A stretch of 63,903 nt of DNA, the filler included, from Octopus bimaculoides (taxonomy: Eukaryota), in the NCBI RefSeq assembly GCF_001194135.2. It is 7 parts of 6 records of this genome, joined end to end, with 100 filler letters (N's around TTAATTAATTAA, not from the genome) between each part and the next. Parts side by side here need not be neighbours in the genome. Positions count along the whole stretch, not along the records: positions 52,712 to 58,534 come from NW_026375185.1; 6 more parts are not named here. The stretch is one strand, 5' to 3'. Position numbers and translations under genes: made by a program. Positions 9,991 to 58,634 of the stretch are shown here, one piece after another. Within the stretch, counting starts at the first letter, position 1; every line of letters starts with the position of its first letter. The notes under the pieces are model-generated. The model did not search any database. It was not told the DNA's origin and saw only the letters and a list, made by a program, of their open reading frames with translations.

Positions 9991-10127
9991 ATACTAAAAG
10001 CACGGCTATTGAACGAATTATCACCAACTTCAAATCGGTGATTAGATTTAAATTGCCGGCAGAGGAATACACAAAAAAAACACAAAATGCACACACCCTG
10101 TGTGTGTTCGATGTTGTTTACATATTT

Positions 10128-12925: not shown

Positions 12926-13729
12926 TTGCATTCCTCAGTTTCGTTCATAAGTATGATATAAAAATATCTTTTGATAACTAATATCCATGAACACCCGTAG
13001 GAACACATAAAATCTGAACAACAACGGCTCTATGTTAAAAATCAATATTATCCCCGCGCAAGTGTATGTGAGAGTGTCTGTAAGATAAGAAAATAATAAA
13101 TGCTTTTAGATGAATATTGCAACAAGTGCTAACTGGAAAGTTACGATAATGATGCAAGATGCAGACTAATTAAATAGCATCAGGACTATACGAAGAATAC
13201 TTTCCGCCTAATTATTATCAAGATATCCTGTAAGAAGTATATGACGCGATATTTAATTTTTTGCATTGAAATCTCAAAGAAGAAACATGTATGATGCTTA
13301 AAATATACTTTCCAACATATTTTAACTGTTTTCTGATTGAAATAACGAAGGTCAGTTCATTTCAATTTCCAGTTACCTTGATTTATGTCATATCAATTAA
13401 TCTATCAATGAAATTATTTGTCAACCAGTAGGCACCACCCACACATGCACAGAAATGCGTGCGTGCGCACACACATACACGCACACACACACACACACAC
13501 ACACATACGCTCACACACATACACACATACTTACACCCCTATATACACACATATATATATATGTGCACTCTTCTATCTCTTCTACGTCTTCTCTGTCTAT
13601 CTATCTCTCTCTCCTGTTCTTCTTCCTTTCTGGTTTTCTCTCCCACCTTTTCCATATCCTTCTCTCCTCTTCACCGTTCCTCCTTCTCTCTCTCTCTCTC
13701 TCATTCTTCCTCCTTGACTCTCTTGTCGC

Positions 13730-25873: not shown

Positions 25874-27083
25874 NNNNNNNNNNATATATATGTATGTATG
25901 TATGTATGTATAAGAGACTTAAACCAAACGTTTACAAATGCTTAGGAATATGTTGATCTAGAGGTCTAAACACGCACCCACATGCGCACACAAAATAAAA
26001 TTTAAGAAGGAATGTTACAGAGATATTAAATTAGAACTTAAACACGTAAATGAAATTTGCAGGTTTCAATAGCCCAAATCTCTCATTGATAAATTATAGT
26101 TTATAATATTCTCAAATGTACGGTAAATAACTTTTCAAGACTAGACAGCAAGAAAATCAGAAAAAAATGACTATATTTTGAATACGCTACACAGAAGCTT
26201 ACATATAAATAACTCATGTACTTGGAACACAGAAAGATACACATTTTATTCAAGTAGAAAACTGTTATAAATTATTCACAGTCGGATAGGAAATTTACAT
26301 AGTGAAGATTAATGGGAAGCTAGAAGTTAAAAAAAAATGCGCGTGTTTTCCTTCTTCCAGAAGATGAATATGATTAATTATTAGTTAGATATGAAAAACA
26401 TTATTAGATAGATATGAAAAAATTCTTTAGATATAATAAAAACCATTATTTCTAACAAAAATTGCTATTATTCCTTTAAAAAAAAGTAAAAGGCTAAAAT
26501 GGAACGAGAGAAAGCCATATACTGACGACATAAAACTTAGATAAAGGATAGAATACGACATAGACAAAGTTGCTTAGAAACACAGGTAGTAAGTATGAGA
26601 AAGGAATAATTTTGTTTTGGCAACAGAAAAAAGATGACCTGAGGTATTGAGGCAGAAAATATTTAGTAATGCAAGACATATGAGAGTTGGAAGAAAATAT
26701 ATCTACAAGTAAATTTCAAACTTTATATAAAATGTAGTATATTGCCACTTAAGTGTGGCTGACCCCTAGGGGTGGATGTTACTGTTGCTTTTAGTCCCAG
26801 GAGGACATCTCCTCCAGCTGGCTTATCGACACACGACTGTGTCCTGTTTGCCAAGGGTAGTTATCCCTCTCACCAACATCTGCAGCACGAACGGATCCGG
26901 ATTTCAGGGTTATTTCCCTTCGTCGGCGTCCGATAGCCGCTGACCTTGGTGAGAGCGACAAAAACCTGGCAATCTTATATCTTCTTTTCAAGTGAAATTC
27001 TTCACTGATATCGAAAAGGTGAAAACAAGCAATGTTAATTCTCTAAATGAAGTATTAACAGTAACTGCACGATAAAGTGTAGT

Positions 27084-52264: not shown

Positions 52265-53515
52265 ATATGTGTTTGTGTGTGTGTATATAAATTTTCTTTT
52301 ATTCTTTTACTTGTTTCATTCATTTGACTGCAGCCATGCTGAGTACCGTATGTATGTATGTATGTGTGTGTGTATGCATGTGTGCGTGCGTGTGTGTGTG
52401 TATGTATGTAACTAACCCATGCCAGCATGGAAAATGGATGTTAATTGATAATGATGATGATATATAGCTTGCTTACCAACCACATGGTTCTGGGTTCAGC
52501 CCTACTGTGTGGCACCTTGGGCAAGTGTCTTCTGCTATAGTCTCGGGCTGAGTGGATTTGGTAGACGGAAACTGAAAGAAGCCTATCTTATATGTATATA
52601 TATATGTATATNNNNNNNNNNNNNNNNNNNNNNNNNNNNNNNNNNNNNNNNNNNNTTAATTAATTAANNNNNNNNNNNNNNNNNNNNNNNNNNNNNNNNN
52701 NNNNNNNNNNNCACCACCAATAGGGGCCTTCATTCCCACATTTTAGAGCTCCATGAGCTCCATTTTGCAGGAGCAAAATCTTTTTTACAGGTTCCAGAAG
52801 ACTGAAATTTTGGAATATGCGCATAAAGATCAATAGTATGGGATACATGTCTCATGATTAGAATTTTTTTAGGGTGTGTAAAGAGGGAAAGAACCCTCTT
52901 GTGCAATTTTGATGAAATTCGAATCATATGTATTCCAGTTCCTTACAGAAAATATAACAGAAAAGTCTCATTTTTCAATTGCATGTAACACGGGCAACAC
53001 CGGGTATCTCTGCTAGTAGTCAATAAAAAGGGAACTACTATGGCTGCTCATAAAATCAATGCATACTTATGTCATTTGTCAAATTAATGTATTCCTGTGT
53101 GGCAAGAGCTGAAATGGAATGTGAATCCTAGGCCTCAAATGTTGAGTTTGAGTCAAAATTTCAAGAAATGAACTAATTCCTAAGTAAACATATTTCTAAA
53201 AAAAAAATGCAATAAATTGGGCTACATAAGTCTTCCAGGGCCCAAAATTTGAATGGAATCATATTAGGAATGTAGTTTATTCCCTTTTGCTGTTTTAACA
53301 ATGTATGGAGATTGACATCTGAATTTTACCTAGCGGAAATTCTTGTACATGTAGATTTTGTTTTTCTTTGAGTCAAGTTTTCCCAATAAAAATTATGTTG
53401 TTCAATGAATATTATTTTGTAGACTATTATCGTCCAATGGGATGTTGTTTTTTCCTGCTTTTAAATACAGTCAGATAATTTGTGGTAGTGATTTCTTTTT
53501 CACAAGCAATGTTGA

Positions 53516-53569
<54 letters not shown>

Positions 53570-55498
53570 NNNNNNNNNNNNNNNNNNNNNNNNNNNNNNN
53601 NNNNNNNNNNNNNNNNNNNNNNNNNNNNNNNNNNNNNNNNNNNNNNNNNNNNNNNNNNNNNNNNNNNNNNNNNNNNNNNNNNNNNNNNNNNNNNNNNNNN
53701 NNNNNNNNNNNNNNNNNNNNNNNNNNNNNNNNNNNNNNNNNNNNNNNNNNNNNNNNNNNNNNNNNNNNNNNNNNNNNNNNNNNNNNNNNNNNNNNNNNNN
53801 NNNNNNNNNNNNNNNNNNNNNNNNNNNNNNNNNNNNNNNNNNNNNNNNNNNNNNNNNNNNNNNNNNNNNNNNNNNNNNNNNNNNNNNNNNNNNNNNNNNN
53901 NNNNNNNNNAAAAAAAAAAAAAAAAAAAAAAAAAAGGCCCAAACCGGTCCAGTGGTGGGATAAAATCATAAATTTTCAAAACTTTTTTTCATAAAAAACT
54001 TCCCTCCATTATTTCCAAGGCTGTGGTGCAAAGAAATTGGAGAAATCCCTGTCAAATTGGAGAAAATCCAACTTATGTGGGTGTACTGACCTGAAACTTT
54101 GCTGTTCATAGCCATTTTTAATAGACCATGAAAATTTTATTGAAATAGTGTCAGATCCCAAAATCTCAAGATTTATTTAGTTCTATATCTACTACAAATC
54201 TCAAGTCCCTGTGACTTGTACTTTTGGATTTAGCTAGTTCTGAAAATACCACGAAATCGACTGTTTATTACTTGCCACAAAATAGGCTTTAAATAAATAT
54301 TTAAAAAATTGCAAAAAGGTTCTATTTTCAAGAACCTGAAAAAAATTGGCAACTGCTACCCAATGGACACATAATTTGTGTAATTTGAACAGGATTATTA
54401 CTCCAGTTTCAAAGATATGACATCACAAATATGACTAATTATTCATTAAAGCCAATTAGGTAAGATTTCAACCAATCCACTGATCATTCAGGTTGTAATA
54501 TTCCCTAAAATAGTCATCCAAATTTCACAAATGAGGTATCAAAATGTTTCTTTTTGGATGCCGTTCAAGAAAAAGTACAGCAGAAGTTAAATTTAAATTT
54601 TTTCAAAAATTCATTGTGATAACTACTTGTATGTTAAGATGCTCTGACATCTCATCACTACCATCTCTACTTTCTTTCAAACTATTCCCACCCCTAAACA
54701 ATGCAGGATAGCCATTTATCTCTTTAACAAGACACCTGCGCTTGTCCTTGTCTTATACTTTAACCTTTCAACACTTAATATAAAATCACCAACCCCCTTC
54801 GACTACCCCCCTCTACTTTGTTGTGGGGTGCTTTTCTTTTCTGTTCTTTTCTTTTTCCTGTCTTTTTGCTTTGCAAGTTACTTGGTAACCCCATTATATC
54901 CAGTAACTTGAGAAAAAACACCTAGTACACATTATAAATTGATTGGCATTAAGAAGGGCATCCAGCTGTAGAAACCATGCCAAAGCAGTCACTGGGGTAT
55001 TGTGTAGTCATTGGACCTAGTAGATTTAATATGTCTAGTAAATAATGTGAGTAATTATTTTGTATAATAATTTTATTCATTTTCTACTATAGTGTTTATT
55101 TCTAGGTTTTTATGGTATAACTTTTACAGATTTGTGTGTATGTGTGTATGTAGAAGCTATGCCAAAACAGACAATGGAGCCTGGTGTAGCCTTAGCAGCT
55201 CCTATCAAATCATCCAACCCATGCCAACATTGAACATGGACATTAAACGATCATATGACCACTACCAGTCACATGAAACTAGACAATGTAGTGCTGGATA
55301 TACAAAAATATTTGGATGGTCATGGATGGAATGCTTTTGATCATTGGTGTTCATGATTAGTTCTGACCTGGTGTTGAACAACAGTTCTAACAGCATCAAA
55401 CACATTTATTTAATGGTATCTTTTCTTTTATATTTTTCAGGCAGCGTTTTGTTCTATCACCAAGCAGTCTCGTCCTGACTCCCATCATTATAGTTAAG

Positions 55499-55990
55499 AT
55501 GACCAGTAATTCAAATGACGAATATCTGATGAAATTTCTCAACACAGAATTAAAAGAACTTAATCAACATCATATTGATCATATTGCTCTTAGGCTGAAA
55601 GAGAATAATTTATTTAACGATCATGACTGGTTAGAAAAATCAAAACTGTTAACAGAAGGATCTTCAAAATATAGCAGATTTTTTTGGAAACTATTCTGTC
55701 TCTTACGTGACCCAAAAACTGCTAAATCAACTTTTGATACTATAGTGAATTCTTTGCATGACTGTGAGCTATGGGTAGCTCACAATTTAGAATTTGCTGA
55801 TAGCACATGCAACAGAATGAAAAATAATATGGAGATTCTTGACGCTAAACAGAACATTGTTGCTAAAATTGAGTTAGATGGGACCCAGAAACTGTTCATA
55901 AAGCCAATGAGTCCTGAGTTGATTAACCAAACGCAAACTGATTTATCCCAAATTAAGAGAGAACTTTTCTTTTTTAAAGCGACAAATTGA
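55499..55990 (+). CDS. 163-aa intronless ORF, CARD/death-fold-like N-terminal ~100 aa (uncharacterised); exon probably starts at 55441
   Basis: The frame is open for 199 codons (55391-55987) in AT-rich non-repetitive DNA. It is preceded by a polypyrimidine tract and CAG acceptor at 55421-55440 with CTAAC/TTAAT branch-like motifs upstream; the ATG has A at -3. A six-helix pattern (LMKFLNTELKEL / IDHIALRLKENNLF / NDHDWLEK / YSRFFWKLFCLL / STFDTIVNSLHD / LWVAHNLE) resembles CARD spacing by eye; no HMM was run. Confidence 0.62.
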   Translation: MTSNSNDEYLMKFLNTELKELNQHHIDHIALRLKENNLFNDHDWLEKSKLLTEGSSKYSRFFWKLFCLLRDPKTAKSTFDTIVNSLHDCELWVAHNLEFADSTCNRMKNNMEILDAKQNIVAKIELDGTQKLFIKPMSPELINQTQTDLSQIKRELFFFKATN

Positions 55991-56599
55991 ATATATTGTG
56001 ACAGGATTACCAAATAATATAAACGGAAAACAAAAGCATGAAAAAAAATTGTGATAAAATGTGTTTTTCTCTCACAGTTGTTATTAAATCTTTTTAATGT
56101 TTCTTTGGCTGTTATTTTTGTGTTGTAGAAGCAAAAGTTGTTTATTTTTCCTGCCTGCCCTTCCCTCCTTTCTTTCTTTCATACTGGAACCTCTTCATCT
56201 TCTCACATAAAGATTCCACACTAGATTTTGTAGTTTTGTGAGCAGTATGATGACCTCATTAGTGCTAGTGACACACACAAAAAAGCACCTAATACATTTT
56301 AGGAAGGGTATCCAACCATAAAACCATGTCATAGCAGACACTGAGGTACCATGCTGTCTTTGGACCCATCAAACTTGTCAAACCATTCAACCCACAACAG
56401 CATGGAACATTGATGTTAAATGATGATGATGAAATACCAGCAGATGGTTCAAGTTGTATTGCTAGCACTATGTAGTTCCTCCAGCATAAACACTTAAAGT
56501 TCAAAACTGGGGAAAAGTAGACTGTAGAAGTGAAAGAATTGAAATTTAAATTTTGATTTCAATTCTAACTGAAAACTTGATAAAAAAAGTTTGAATTTC

Positions 56600-57870
56600 A
56601 TCTGCCAGTACCGCCTGACTTGCATTCGTGCCGATGGCACGTAAAAGCACCCACTATACTCTCTGAGTGGTTGGCGTTAGGAAGGGCATCCAGCTGTAGA
56701 AACTCTGCCAAATGCTGTGCGTGAGAAATCCCGGCAAGCCAAATGAGACCTAAATCTAAGGCCTCAGCCAGTCCACTTATGCGTACCTTCCTTCATTGGA
56801 CACTAAACTCCACTTGCGAAGAACTGTTGAGGCAAGTGAAATCGAAATCGAGTTAAATTCGATGACTGACACTCATGCCAATGTCGTTTCCTTCATTGGA
56901 CACGAAACTCAGCTTGCAAAGACTTATTGGGGACAGCGAAATTGTGATGTCACCTGTGCCCAGCGTCGCCTTTCTGGCACTTGTGCCCGCGGCATATGTA
57001 AGGACTTTCGAGAGAGATCGTTGCCAGTGCCCCTGGACTGGCTCTTGTGCGGGTGGCACATAAAATACACCATTTTGAGTGTGGCCGTTGCCAGTACCAC
57101 CTGACTGGCCTTCGTGCCGGTGGCACGTAAAAGCACCCACTACACTCTCTGAGTGGTTGGCGTTAGGAAGGCATCCAGCTGTAGAAACTCTGCCAATTGG
57201 AAATATGCTGTCCGTGAGAAGACCCGGCAAGCCAAGTGAAACCTAAATCTAAGGCCTCAGCCAGTCCACTTATGCATACCTTCCTTCCTTCATTGGACAC
57301 TAAACTCNNNNNNNNNNNNNNNNNNNNNNNNNNNNNNNNNNNNNNNNNNNNNNNNNNNNNNNNNNNNNNNNNNNNNNNNNNNNNNNNNNNNNNNNNNNNN
57401 NNNNNNNNNNNNNNNNNNNNNNNNNNNNNNNNNNNNNNNNNNNNNNNNNNNNNNNNNNNNNNNNNNNNNNNNNNNNNNNNNNNNNNNNNNNNGCGAAATT
57501 GTGATGTCACCTGTGCCCAGCGTCGCCTTTCTGGCACTTGTGCCCGCGGCATATGTAAGGACTTTCGAGAGAGATCGTTGCCAGTGCCCCTGGACTGGCT
57601 CTTGTGCGGGTGGCACATAAAATACACCATTTTCAGCGTGGCCGTTGCCAGTACCGCCTGACTGGCCTTCGTGCCGGTGGCACGTAAAAGTACCCATTAC
57701 ACTCTCTGAGTGGTTGACGTTAGGAAGGGCATCTAGCTGTAGAAACTCTGCCAAATCAGATTGGAGCCTGCCATAGCCATCTGGTTTCACCAGTCCTCAG
57801 TCAAATCGTCCAACCCATGCCAGCATGGAAAGCGGACGTTAAACGACGACGACGACGATGATGATGATGG
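56600..57870 (+). mobile_element. Tandemly duplicated RTE-tail-related element
   Basis: 56937-57077 is repeated identically at 57493-57633, and 56695-56810 recurs at 57180-57307. Confidence 0.8.
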
Positions 57871-58090
57871 TTATAAGGAATAGTAATAAATAGGTACAGG
57901 TATGCCTACAGGTGTAGGGGCACCTATAGGCACAGGCACGGCTGTGTGATAAGAAGCTTGCTTTCCAATAGCCTTTTTCTGAGTTCGCTTCCACCGCGTG
58001 GCACCTTGGCCACATGCCTCCTTTCATAGCCTCAAGTTGAACAAAGCTTTGTGAGTGGATTGGAAGACAGAAACTGAAAGAAACCCATCA

Positions 58091-58127
<37 letters not shown>

Positions 58128-58496
58128 GTGCGTGTGTCTTTGTATCTTTGTATCTCAGTTTGTCCCCCACCACTGCAGAGAAGAAACCAATATTTTGAGT
58201 TTCCACAATCACTTGGAACATGGAAAATGACGAAGAGTTCACTTCTATTTTTTTCAACTTGTACTTGTTTCACTTGTTGGACTGTGGACATAGTGGGGCA
58301 CAACATTGAGGGGGTTTACTCAAGTTGACCCAAACACTTTTTTAAAGTGTGGTACTTGTGTTATTGGTCCCTTTCGCTGAAATGCTTAGTTAATGGAGAT
58401 TTAAACAAACCAATACCAGTTGTTAAGCTGCCATGGGGGACTAAGCTACTGTTGGTTCAGATAGTAAGTCCTTTGATTAGGTCCTATATATATATG

Positions 58497-58531
<35 letters not shown>

Positions 58532-58634
58532 GTGNNNNNNNNNNNNNNNNNNNNNNNNNNNNNNNNNNNNNNNNNNNNTTAATTAATTAANNNNNNNNNN
58601 NNNNNNNNNNNNNNNNNNNNNNNNNNNNNNNNNN

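What the first reader, a model, noticed from the sequence alone, without database searches (positions are those of the whole stretch)
55441..55990. Compact intronless CARD-like ORF apparently nested in the ArgRS locus
Seen: a 199-codon open frame in unique AT-rich DNA, a strong 3' splice site at 55440 and a good-context ATG at 55499, encoding 163 aa with no transposon motifs. Established: CARD domains are six-helix death folds, and CARD-only proteins modulate caspase and inflammasome signalling. Inference: residues ~9-98 show CARD-like spacing, followed by a ~60-aa helical tail. This would be a CARD-only-type protein on the same strand as the ArgRS exons and inside the same CpG-depleted domain, probably within a long ArgRS intron. 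It is the best candidate for an undescribed gene in the window.
Basis: partly seen in the sequence, partly recalled or inferred. Interest (0 to 1): 0.75.

Follow-up and report, generated by a model that had tools for sequence, protein, structure and literature searches.

The report
Fast-evolving octopus-only gene, possibly CARD-like

Summary
Window 55394-55990 (+) is a 199-codon open frame, with an ATG ORF of 163 aa at 55499-55990 and a strong acceptor at 55440|55441. The piece is Octopus bimaculoides. The ORF is already a deposited protein model. Its orthologues are annotated as 'uncharacterized' or 'hypothetical' in O. sinensis (XP_029644562.1) and O. vulgaris (CAI9732743.1/44.1). The O. vulgaris model splices two small upstream exons onto the position orthologous to 55441.

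No other homologue was found in 1.84 billion representative proteins, in a profile search, in Pfam or in PDB sequences.

The coding sequence evolves faster than its flanks:
- O. bimaculoides vs O. sinensis: 81% identity in the CDS against 92-94% in the flanks, dN/dS about 1.5.
- O. sinensis vs O. vulgaris: 12 substitutions in 561 nt (11 non-synonymous) against 26 in 11,951 flanking nt (p = 5e-8).
- All indels are in frame.

CARD membership fails by sequence. However, an AlphaFold model from a 4-sequence alignment (pLDDT 59) gives six helices in residues 4-110. Its best Foldseek matches in both the PDB and a viral library are CARDs (TM about 0.6, E about 0.5, not significant).

Verdict: a real, positively selected, genus-restricted gene. 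The death-fold reading is plausible but unproven. Nesting in ArgRS is unsupported.

The parts
55412..55440 (+). 3' splice acceptor: pyrimidine tract plus AG (aatggtatcttttcttttatatttttcag)
   Evidence: Sequence. It is 100% identical in O. sinensis and O. vulgaris. The orthologous AG (L003 26606-26607) is the acceptor of the last exon in O. vulgaris model CAI9732743.1, whose protein reads ...KFN|RQRFVLSP... across the junction.
55441..55498 (+). 58-nt leader of the terminal exon. It is in frame with the ORF and has no stop (RQRFVLSPSSLVLTPIIIVK). It is either 5' UTR or, in the longer O. vulgaris isoform, coding.
   Evidence: 51 of 58 nt are identical to O. sinensis.
55499..55990 (+). Coding sequence, 163 codons plus TGA. 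The protein is identical to a deposited O. bimaculoides protein.
   Evidence: The syntenic orthologues are intact.
55508..55828 (+). Residues 4-110: predicted six-helix domain (H4-17, H23-35, H43-50, H59-70, H75-88, H93-110), a candidate death-fold / CARD-like bundle.
   Evidence: AlphaFold2 with alignment A1; the ten-residue blocks spanning residues 1-100 have mean pLDDT between 48 and 83. Foldseek top hits are CARDs. dN/dS is about 2.0 in this part.
55829..55987 (+). Residues 111-163: low-confidence helical tail. It has two conserved blocks (NNMxxLDxKQNIVAKIE and IKxELFFxKAT) and a variable middle.
55651..55652 (+). Point between codons 51 and 52 where O. sinensis and O. vulgaris carry an extra in-frame unit of 24-25 codons. 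The unit is a tandem copy of the 'HIxHIALRLKENNLxNDHDWxEK' segment.
   Evidence: Protein alignments. The two DNA units in O. vulgaris are about 88% identical.
55991..56100 (+). Probable 3' UTR with a candidate ATTAAA poly(A) signal at 56083-56088 (inferred, not shown).
   Evidence: Sequence. The motif and its surroundings are conserved in O. sinensis. No transcript data were available here.

Best explanation
Window 55441-55990 is the last exon, and the only substantial coding exon, of a real spliced gene known so far only from Octopus bimaculoides, O. sinensis and O. vulgaris. It encodes a small protein of 163 aa in O. bimaculoides and 186-188 aa in the other two. The protein has no signal peptide or membrane segment apparent by eye, so it is presumably cytosolic.

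Shown: the reading frame is kept intact, while amino-acid replacements accumulate 2-10 times faster than substitutions in the surrounding non-coding DNA, on two independent time scales. This is the pattern expected from recurrent positive (diversifying) selection.

Inferred: residues about 4-110 fold into a six-helix death-fold bundle of the CARD type that has diverged beyond sequence recognition, followed by a helical tail. On this reading the protein works like CARD-only proteins. It would bind other death-fold proteins (caspases or adaptor proteins) by homotypic contacts, and either seed or cap their signalling assemblies. Its fast evolution would reflect a conflict with pathogens or other antagonists.

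Confidence by layer: real coding gene about 0.85-0.9; positive selection about 0.75; death-fold mechanism about 0.35-0.4. The figure below is for the whole statement.
For: Gene reality:
- The identical 163-aa protein is held by NCBI, nr and UniRef, and a gene with this product is on record on O. bimaculoides LGKD02080315.1.
- Orthologues XP_029644562.1, CAI9732743.1 and CAI9732744.1 exist at syntenic positions with co-linear flanks.
- The O. vulgaris model has canonical exons: L003 10001-10022, a 34-nt exon at 13460-13493, and a last exon starting at 26608, which corresponds to window 55441.
- That annotation adds isoforms only through PASA updates from Iso-Seq and RNA-seq (PMC10700109). Two isoforms therefore imply transcripts (inference).

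Frame maintenance:
- A neutral simulation gives P(no stop after 88 substitutions) of 0.03-0.04.
- All indels are multiples of 3: 24, 3 and 5 codons between O. bimaculoides and O. sinensis/vulgaris, and two single codons between O. sinensis and O. vulgaris.

Acceleration:
- O. bimaculoides vs O. sinensis p-distance is 0.188 in the CDS, against 0.055 upstream, 0.078 downstream and about 0.09-0.11 in farther orthologous blocks.
- pN is 0.224, against near flanks p = 1e-15 and against far blocks p = 8e-11.
- dN/dS is 1.53, 1.40 and 2.47 for the three pairs.
- O. sinensis vs O. vulgaris: 12 substitutions in the 561-nt CDS against 26 in 11,951 flank nt, Fisher p = 5e-8. The CDS is the only hot spot in 12.5 kb, and both lineages changed.

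Fold:
- The model shows six helices (pLDDT 59, pTM 0.51).
- PDB top hits are caspase-1 CARD (prob 0.92, TM 0.64, rmsd 3.8 A over 93 columns), Apaf-1 and caspase-9 CARDs, ICEBERG, NLRC4 and RIP2 CARDs, then pyrin domains and death domains.
- The BFVD top hit is an iridovirus CARD protein.
- A junk model of the same sequence gives no death-fold hits, so the signal is structural and not driven by amino-acid similarity.
- hhalign of residues 1-112 against 13 PDB-verified CARDs aligns the whole domain in register. It scores above 200 residue shuffles, the reversed sequence and almost all 150 helix-block permutations. The score is similar to that of the genuine MAVS CARD when MAVS is left out of the profile.
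Against: - No Pfam CARD, death-fold or other domain match even at E up to 10, for all four proteins.
- No PDB sequence or profile match to a death fold.
- hhalign probability is only 3-4%, and the O. sinensis orthologue does not exceed the null.
- The model rests on 4 sequences (about 2 effective), with a mean pLDDT of 59. The Foldseek E-values (about 0.5) equal those of a junk model.
- O. sinensis and O. vulgaris carry a tandem duplication of the predicted helix-2/helix-3 unit, which is awkward for a compact six-helix bundle.
- Several hydrophobic positions change to charged residues or proline (L14R, W92P, V93E). Hydrophobic positions are not significantly better conserved than polar ones (p = 0.13).
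- dN versus dS alone is not significant (p = 0.14).
- dS (0.17-0.19) is itself above the nearest flanks.
- No caspase or other death-fold gene is listed within 10 kb of the orthologues.
- No direct expression data were seen.
Confidence: 0.4

Rival explanations
1. It is a real, fast-evolving, genus-restricted orphan gene, but not a death fold. On this reading it is a novel helical protein, possibly born de novo from non-coding DNA between old SINE copies. It would act in some other conflict-prone process such as reproduction, meiotic drive or toxin-antidote systems, or chromatin. The CARD hits would be the generic resemblance of a small predicted helical bundle.
For: - No homologue outside Octopus in an exhaustive HMMER search and in a profile search.
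- No domain match.
- Foldseek E-values are not significant and are equal to those of a junk model.
- The hhalign signal is absent in the O. sinensis orthologue.
- The duplication of the helix-2/3 unit is tolerated.
- Codon positions diverge about equally, [42, 28, 28].
- The hydrophobic core is not significantly conserved.
Against: - In two independent structure libraries the only matches with TM above 0.5 are death folds, mostly CARDs, and they cover the whole domain at 3.6-4.5 A rmsd.
- The hhalign alignment is full length and in register, and it beats the helix-block permutations.
Confidence: 0.35
2. It is not protein-coding. On this reading the ORF is a chance open frame in the last exon of a non-coding transcript, carried from one genome annotation to the next by protein-to-genome alignment.
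For: - Chance ORFs of this length are expected genome-wide.
- The codon-position pattern and dN/dS near or above 1 show no purifying selection.
- The O. vulgaris pipeline used O. bimaculoides proteins as evidence.
- No domain match and no expression data were seen here.
Against: - Neutral DNA should diverge like its flanks, yet the ORF diverges 2-10 times faster, with sharp boundaries at the start and stop.
- The frame survives about 88 substitutions (P about 0.03) and five indel events that are all multiples of 3. The joint probability is of the order of 1e-4.
Confidence: 0.08
3. The excess divergence is mutational rather than selective, for example gene conversion from an unseen diverged paralogue, or a local hypermutable tract. 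On this reading the gene need not be under positive selection.
For: - Synonymous divergence (pS 0.155) is also above the nearest flanks (p = 0.009).
- The transition:transversion ratio differs between the CDS (43:45) and the flanks (52:34).
Against: - No paralogue was found in the protein databases or in the 13-37 kb loci.
- The O. sinensis/O. vulgaris changes are scattered single substitutions, 11 of 12 non-synonymous, and occurred in both lineages. They are not a conversion tract.
- pS is not different from the farther non-coding blocks (p = 0.14).
- The hot spot coincides with the CDS limits.
Confidence: 0.1
4. It is a transposon-borne or transposon-derived ORF.
For: - The ORF lies between SINE-like copies.
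- A Tc5/pogo HTH remnant lies 7 kb upstream in L001, and a FAM200/ZBED5-like ORF lies 8 kb downstream in O. sinensis.
Against: - No transposase, integrase or reverse-transcriptase domain.
- One copy was seen per locus and per protein set.
- No terminal inverted repeats flank it.
- The position and flanks are orthologous in three species.
- The neighbouring elements are on the other strand and are separate.
Confidence: 0.03

Closest known systems
Vertebrate CARD-only proteins (ICEBERG/CARD18, COP/CARD16, INCA/CARD17)
   Same: A small protein made essentially of one predicted six-helix bundle. Foldseek TM is 0.62 to ICEBERG (1dgn) and 0.64 to the caspase-1 CARD. Proposed to act by homotypic death-fold contacts.
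   Different: Those proteins are recent duplicates of the caspase-1 CARD, are easily recognised by sequence (E = 1e-24), and lie next to caspase genes (the gene location is from my own knowledge). The octopus protein has no sequence match to any CARD, and no caspase is listed within 10 kb. It also carries an extra helical tail of about 55 aa.
Iridovirus CARD-only proteins (Lymphocystis disease virus 3, Cod iridovirus)
   Same: They are the best structural match in the viral library, TM 0.60-0.61 over the whole protein of about 93 aa. They are stand-alone CARDs.
   Different: They are viral, are annotated as CARD, and share 7-17% identity with the octopus protein. The E-values are not significant.
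MAVS CARD, as an example of a sequence-divergent CARD
   Same: When MAVS is left out of the 13-CARD profile it scores 15.0 in hhalign (probability 1.4%). That is the range of the octopus domain, which scores 17.6. This shows that a true CARD can escape this test.
   Different: The MAVS CARD fold is solved and its filament function is demonstrated. Nothing comparable exists here.
Taxonomically restricted ('orphan') genes under positive selection
   Same: No homologue outside one genus, short, a single coding exon, dN/dS at or above 1, and rapid in-frame indels and duplications.
   Different: Most orphan genes evolve at about the neutral rate. This one exceeds the local non-coding rate 2-10 fold.

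Membership tests
CARD domain (Pfam PF00619) / death-fold superfamily | Significant match to the family's sequence model | tested here: not met
   hmmscan against Pfam-A at E up to 10 gave no CARD, Death, DED or PYRIN hit for the O. bimaculoides protein, its 198-aa extended frame, or the three orthologue forms. A profile of A1 against PDB sequences gave 0 hits.
CARD domain (Pfam PF00619) / death-fold superfamily | Profile-profile similarity to bona fide CARDs | tested here: inconclusive
   hhalign of residues 1-112 against 13 PDB-verified CARDs gave a local score of 17.6 (P 0.011, probability 3.7%) and a global score of 15.5 (P 0.005). These are above 200 shuffles, the reversed sequence and 149-150 of 150 helix-block permutations. 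The O. sinensis orthologue scores 10-12, which is null level. True CARDs score 25-63 when left out of the profile (most 41-63), except MAVS at 15.
CARD domain (Pfam PF00619) / death-fold superfamily | Six antiparallel helices in the death-fold arrangement | tested here: inconclusive
   The AlphaFold2 model (4-sequence alignment, pLDDT 59, pTM 0.51) has six helices in residues 4-110. The best Foldseek matches are CARDs, with TM 0.59-0.64 and rmsd 3.6-4.5 A over 89-94 columns, followed by pyrin domains and death domains. The E-values are at least 0.45, which is no better than a junk model obtains.
CARD domain (Pfam PF00619) / death-fold superfamily | Kinked or broken helix 1 (H1a/H1b), typical of CARDs as opposed to other death folds | tested here: inconclusive
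   DSSP on the model shows one continuous helix at residues 4-17.
CARD domain (Pfam PF00619) / death-fold superfamily | Homotypic binding or filament formation with another death-fold protein | not testable with these tools
   This needs pull-down, two-hybrid or filament assays.
CARD-only decoy proteins derived from a caspase (COP/INCA/ICEBERG type) | Recognisable paralogy to a caspase CARD, and a position beside the parent caspase gene | tested here: not met
   There is no sequence similarity to the caspase-1 or caspase-9 CARD. No caspase is among the called genes within 10 kb either side in O. sinensis or O. vulgaris.
Taxonomically restricted (orphan) gene | No detectable homologue outside a narrow lineage | tested here: met
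   phmmer against 1.84 billion representative proteins returned only its own cluster. The word-indexed single-sequence and profile searches of 5.8 billion clusters returned only the O. bimaculoides and O. vulgaris/sinensis clusters. Caveat: unannotated cephalopod genomes could not be searched at the DNA level.
Transposable-element ORF | Transposase, RT or integrase domain; multiple copies; terminal repeats | tested here: not met
   No such domain, a single copy in each locus, no flanking inverted repeats, and an orthologous position in three species.

The most novel reading that the evidence does not exclude
An Octopus-specific death-fold protein with no sequence-detectable relatives. It would be either an extremely diverged CARD or a death fold that arose independently, and it would be locked in an evolutionary arms race. 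It is the single substitution hot spot in 12.5 kb between two species about 2.5 million years apart. This could point to an undescribed, fast-evolving regulator of caspase or innate-immune signalling in cephalopods.
Probability: 0.3. Interest if true: 0.65.

Novelty: new member of a known kind. Interest (0 to 1): 0.45.

Why it matters
Cephalopod innate immunity and cell-death signalling are poorly mapped, and orphan genes make up a large unexplained part of these genomes. This is a concrete, small and easily expressed protein. It has one of the clearest signs of adaptive evolution obtainable from three genomes: the coding sequence changes 10 times faster than 12 kb of flanking DNA. There is also a testable structural hypothesis, a death fold. 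If that is confirmed, it would show that death-fold adaptors can diverge beyond sequence recognition within molluscs, and it would give an entry point to an octopus-specific host-pathogen or genetic-conflict pathway. If the fold is not confirmed, the gene remains a good case study of a fast-evolving lineage-restricted gene. The gene model itself is not new.

Tried and rejected
- **Pfam, all forms of the protein:** only sub-threshold noise (YecM at E 0.04, fungal HAT1_C at E 0.46), which I rejected.
- **PDB sequence search:** weak P450 7A1 and CD38 matches at E of at least 0.38, rejected as chance. The profile search gave nothing.
- **First homologous-protein run:** it timed out and was repeated successfully.
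- **Single-sequence AlphaFold:** pLDDT 38, unusable. I used it only as a negative control for Foldseek.
- **Rfam and tRNA scans of the piece:** nothing found, so the flanking SINE-like repeats could not be tied to a tRNA here.
- **Literature searches:** nothing on LOC115218773, and nothing relevant on octopus CARD or death-domain proteins.
- **Core-versus-surface conservation:** hydrophobic versus polar conservation was not significant, so it cannot be used as support for a folded core.
- **dN versus dS alone:** not significant. The selection argument rests on the comparison with non-coding flanks.
- **Minus-strand ORF 55780-56013 (77 aa):** treated as a chance overlap and not tested further.
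- **File access:** L002 was not visible as its own file in the sandbox. I first pasted its sequence by hand, and later found it inside L001.fa.
Full report
**What is there**

The piece (window 52712-58534) is AT-rich animal DNA with two assembly gaps. The frame 55394-55990 on the plus strand is open for 199 codons. Its first ATG, at 55499, starts a 163-aa ORF that ends with TGA at 55988-55990. Immediately upstream lies tatcttttcttttatatttttcag|g, with the AG at 55439-55440. No repeat family overlaps the ORF, and GC is 31-35%.

Length alone is weak evidence. In 3000 first-order Markov simulations of the 3398-nt gap-free segment, 4 reached 199 open codons and 10 reached a 163-aa ATG ORF. That is rare locally but expected many times in a large genome.

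**Where it comes from and whether it is known**

An exact look-up places the protein on Octopus bimaculoides contig LGKD02080315.1 of GCA_001194135.2. The identical sequence is already held by NCBI, nr, UniRef, EukProt and MetaClust. It is therefore a deposited gene model, not an undescribed gene.

The only relatives in 5.8 billion protein clusters form one cluster:
- O. vulgaris CAI9732744.1 (188 aa) and CAI9732743.1 (226 aa), annotated 'hypothetical predicted protein'.
- O. sinensis XP_029644562.1 (186 aa), annotated 'uncharacterized protein LOC115218773'.

An exhaustive phmmer search of 1.84 billion representative proteins found nothing beyond the query's own cluster. A profile search with the four-sequence alignment A1 found nothing more. 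As far as annotated proteins show, the family is restricted to Octopus.

**Gene structure**

The 226-aa O. vulgaris isoform reads MCMCLAPDEENKEEVKFN|RQRFVLSPRSFLVTPIVIVK-MTSNS... The part after the bar is the translation of the 58 nt between the acceptor and the ATG; the window equivalent is RQRFVLSPSSLVLTPIIIVK.

In the O. vulgaris locus L003 the model has three exons with canonical GT/AG sites:
- exon 1 at 10001-10022;
- a 34-nt exon at 13460-13493;
- a last exon starting at 26608, 58 nt before the ATG, exactly as 55441 precedes 55499 in the window.

That annotation combines Iso-Seq and RNA-seq evidence through PASA and EVM, and it adds alternative isoforms only through PASA updates (PMC10700109). 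Two isoforms and a 34-nt micro-exon therefore imply transcript support. This is an inference, because I saw no reads. 'Intronless' is true only of the coding part.

No overlapping host gene, ArgRS or caspase is among the called genes within 10 kb of the orthologues. The neighbours are a C2H2 zinc-finger gene and a FAM200/ZBED5-like ORF, both on the other strand.

**Evolution**

This is the most informative result. The O. bimaculoides and O. sinensis loci align continuously through the shared SINE-like copies on both sides of the gene.

| Region (O. bimaculoides vs O. sinensis) | Identity |
|---|---|
| 560 nt upstream | 94.5% |
| 630 nt downstream | 92.2% |
| Leader (58 nt) | 88% |
| CDS | 81% |

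The indels in the CDS are all in frame: 24, 3 and 5 codons in the protein alignment. Farther orthologous blocks have p-distances of about 0.09-0.11.

Nei-Gojobori estimates:

| Pair | dN | dS | dN/dS |
|---|---|---|---|
| bimaculoides - sinensis | 0.265 | 0.173 | 1.53 |
| bimaculoides - vulgaris | 0.265 | 0.189 | 1.40 |
| sinensis - vulgaris | 0.025 | 0.010 | 2.47 (11 non-synonymous : 1 synonymous) |

Further points:
- Differences by codon position are 42, 28 and 28.
- The non-synonymous proportion (0.224) exceeds the near flanks (0.068, p = 1e-15) and the far blocks (0.097, p = 8e-11). dN against dS alone is not significant (p = 0.14).
- An independent, younger contrast gives the same answer. 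O. sinensis and O. vulgaris, about 2.5 million years apart (PMC10700109), differ at 12 of 561 CDS positions plus two 3-nt indels. They differ at only 26 of 11,951 positions in 6 kb on each side, a ten-fold difference (Fisher p = 5e-8).
- All 12 substitutions lie within the CDS limits. No other 561-nt window has more than 5. Changes occurred on both lineages when polarised with O. bimaculoides.
- Under neutrality the frame would survive 88 substitutions with a probability of about 0.03-0.04. Five indel events that are all multiples of three add a factor of about 0.004.

Together these results show two things: selection keeps the frame open, and replacements are driven faster than the local neutral rate. 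This is recurrent positive or diversifying selection on a translated protein. A purely mutational explanation (gene conversion or a hot spot) fits poorly, because the changes are scattered, mostly non-synonymous and bounded by the CDS. It is not excluded, because synonymous divergence is also above the nearest flanks (p = 0.009).

**Is it a CARD?**

By sequence, no:
- Pfam at E up to 10 shows no CARD, Death, DED or Pyrin match for any of the four proteins.
- PDB sequence and profile searches show none.

I then assembled 13 CARD sequences. Eleven were written from memory and checked against PDB chains, which they matched at about 2 bits per residue over their full length. Two more (ICEBERG and the 6j52 CARD-only protein) were copied from the printed PDB alignments. 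I ran hhalign with controls:
- Residues 1-112 of the O. bimaculoides protein align over the whole CARD in register. The segment 'IDHIALRLKENNLFNDHDW' falls on helices 2-3, 'YSRFFWKLFCLL' on helix 4 and 'STFDTIVNSLHD' on helix 5.
- The local score is 17.6 (P 0.011) and the global score 15.5 (P 0.005).
- These exceed 200 residue shuffles (maxima 16.3 and 12.1), the reversed sequence, and 150 of 150 (local) or 149 of 150 (global) helix-block permutations.
- However, the probability is only about 3-4%, and the O. sinensis orthologue scores at null level.
- Genuine CARDs left out of the profile score 25-63 (most 41-63), except MAVS at 15.0.

At the fold level the picture is more favourable but soft:
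- Single-sequence AlphaFold failed (pLDDT 38).
- With alignment A1 the model reaches pLDDT 59 and pTM 0.51. It has six helices at 4-17, 23-35, 43-50, 59-70, 75-88 and 93-110, with block pLDDT up to 83, followed by two low-confidence long helices.
- Foldseek against the PDB ranks the caspase-1 CARD first (prob 0.92, TM 0.64 normalised to the target, rmsd 3.8 A over 93 columns). Next come Apaf-1 and caspase-9 CARDs, ICEBERG, NLRC4 and RIP2 CARDs, then pyrin domains and the MyD88/IRAK death domains. Nothing else exceeds TM 0.5.
- Against the independent BFVD viral library, the top hit is the CARD protein of Lymphocystis disease virus 3 (TM 0.60). The cod iridovirus CARD protein is the only other match above TM 0.5.
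- All E-values are at least 0.45. The junk single-sequence model obtains similar E-values, but with TM of at most 0.32 and no death fold.

The E-values therefore carry no weight. The consistent CARD ranking reflects the geometry of one medium-confidence model.

Points against a conserved compact bundle:
- The tandem duplication of the helix-2/3 unit in O. sinensis and O. vulgaris (78 and 81 nt, about 88% identical to each other).
- Replacements such as L14R, W92P and V93E.
- No significant excess conservation of hydrophobic positions.

**Most likely mechanism**

Shown:
- It is a real gene restricted to Octopus, with a maintained reading frame.
- Its product evolves adaptively.

Inferred from the O. 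vulgaris annotation:
- The gene is spliced.

Inferred, at about 35-40% confidence:
- Residues about 4-110 form a death-fold (CARD-like) bundle.
- The protein acts as a stand-alone adaptor or decoy in homotypic death-fold assemblies.
- Its rapid evolution reflects conflict with pathogens or other antagonists.

The main rival, at about 35%, is a fast-evolving orphan helical protein of another fold and function. A non-coding artefact (about 8%) and a transposon ORF (about 3%) are unlikely.

**Novelty and score**

The gene model is known but uncharacterised. The acceleration relative to the flanks and the tentative death-fold assignment appear to be new, since literature searches found nothing on this gene. 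I rate it as a probable new, highly divergent member of a known kind and of moderate interest (0.45). It is a clear, cheap-to-test candidate, but the functional claim rests on a shallow-alignment model.

Noticed in passing
window 54920-55255, 56290-56430, 56603-56720, 57089-57205, 57646-57870: There are several copies of a SINE-like repeat. They share the core AGGAAGGGCATCCAGCTGTAGAAAC and a tail TCCAACCCATGCCAGCATGGAA...GTTAAACGATGATGATGA. The two copies bracketing the gene are present at the same positions in O. sinensis and O. vulgaris, so they predate the species split. The upstream copy is split by about 160 nt of other sequence. No tRNA or Rfam match was found.
   Followed up: partly
window 56603-57760: A GC-rich (about 50%) block is repeated at 486-557-nt spacing (families D1, D2 and D4, 92-97% identical). 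It is interrupted by an assembly gap at 57309-57492. It may be a tandem array of composite repeats or an assembly artefact. O. sinensis diverges from the window at about 56600.
   Followed up: no
window 53519-53935: An assembly gap (N run at 53570-53909) is flanked by (TC)25 on one side and A26 on the other.
   Followed up: no
window 58091-58137 and 58485-58533: (TG)n and (TA)n microsatellites.
   Followed up: no
L003 26735-26893 (O. vulgaris); equivalent in L002 (O. sinensis): An in-frame tandem duplication of a 26-27-codon unit (SHINHIALRLKENNLINNHDWVEKTQ / SYINPFALWLEENDDLINDHDWVEKTK), about 88% identical at the DNA level. It is absent from O. bimaculoides. Without an outgroup it is unknown whether it was gained in O. 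sinensis/vulgaris or lost in O. bimaculoides.
   Followed up: partly
window 55499-55990 compared with 54880-55440 and 55991-56620: Synonymous-site divergence in the CDS (pS 0.155) is also higher than in the immediately adjacent non-coding DNA (0.055-0.078; p = 0.009), although not higher than in farther blocks. Either the near flanks (UTR and intron end) are constrained, or the CDS has some extra mutational input. This is unexplained.
   Followed up: partly
L003 13460-13493 and 10001-10022: The O. vulgaris model includes a 34-nt micro-exon and a 22-nt first coding exon. The start of that first exon (ATGTGCATGTGT) is built of TG/CA repeats, with a (CA)n microsatellite just downstream in the intron. 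The upstream start codon of the 226-aa isoform may therefore be spurious.
   Followed up: partly
L001 3032-3586 (-), about 7 kb upstream of the gene and outside the window piece: A 184-aa ORF whose called gene product (175 aa, L001 3032-3559) has a Tc5/pogo-type HTH transposase domain (PF03221), probably a DNA-transposon remnant.
   Followed up: no
L002 18743-19240 (-) and L003 1-1120 (-): The neighbouring called genes at the orthologous loci are a FAM200/ZBED5-like ORF (related to hAT-type transposases) in O. sinensis and a C2H2 zinc-finger gene in O. vulgaris.
   Followed up: no
window 55780-56013 (-): A 77-aa TTG-initiated ORF lies antisense to the 3' end of the gene. It is probably a chance ORF.
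   Followed up: no
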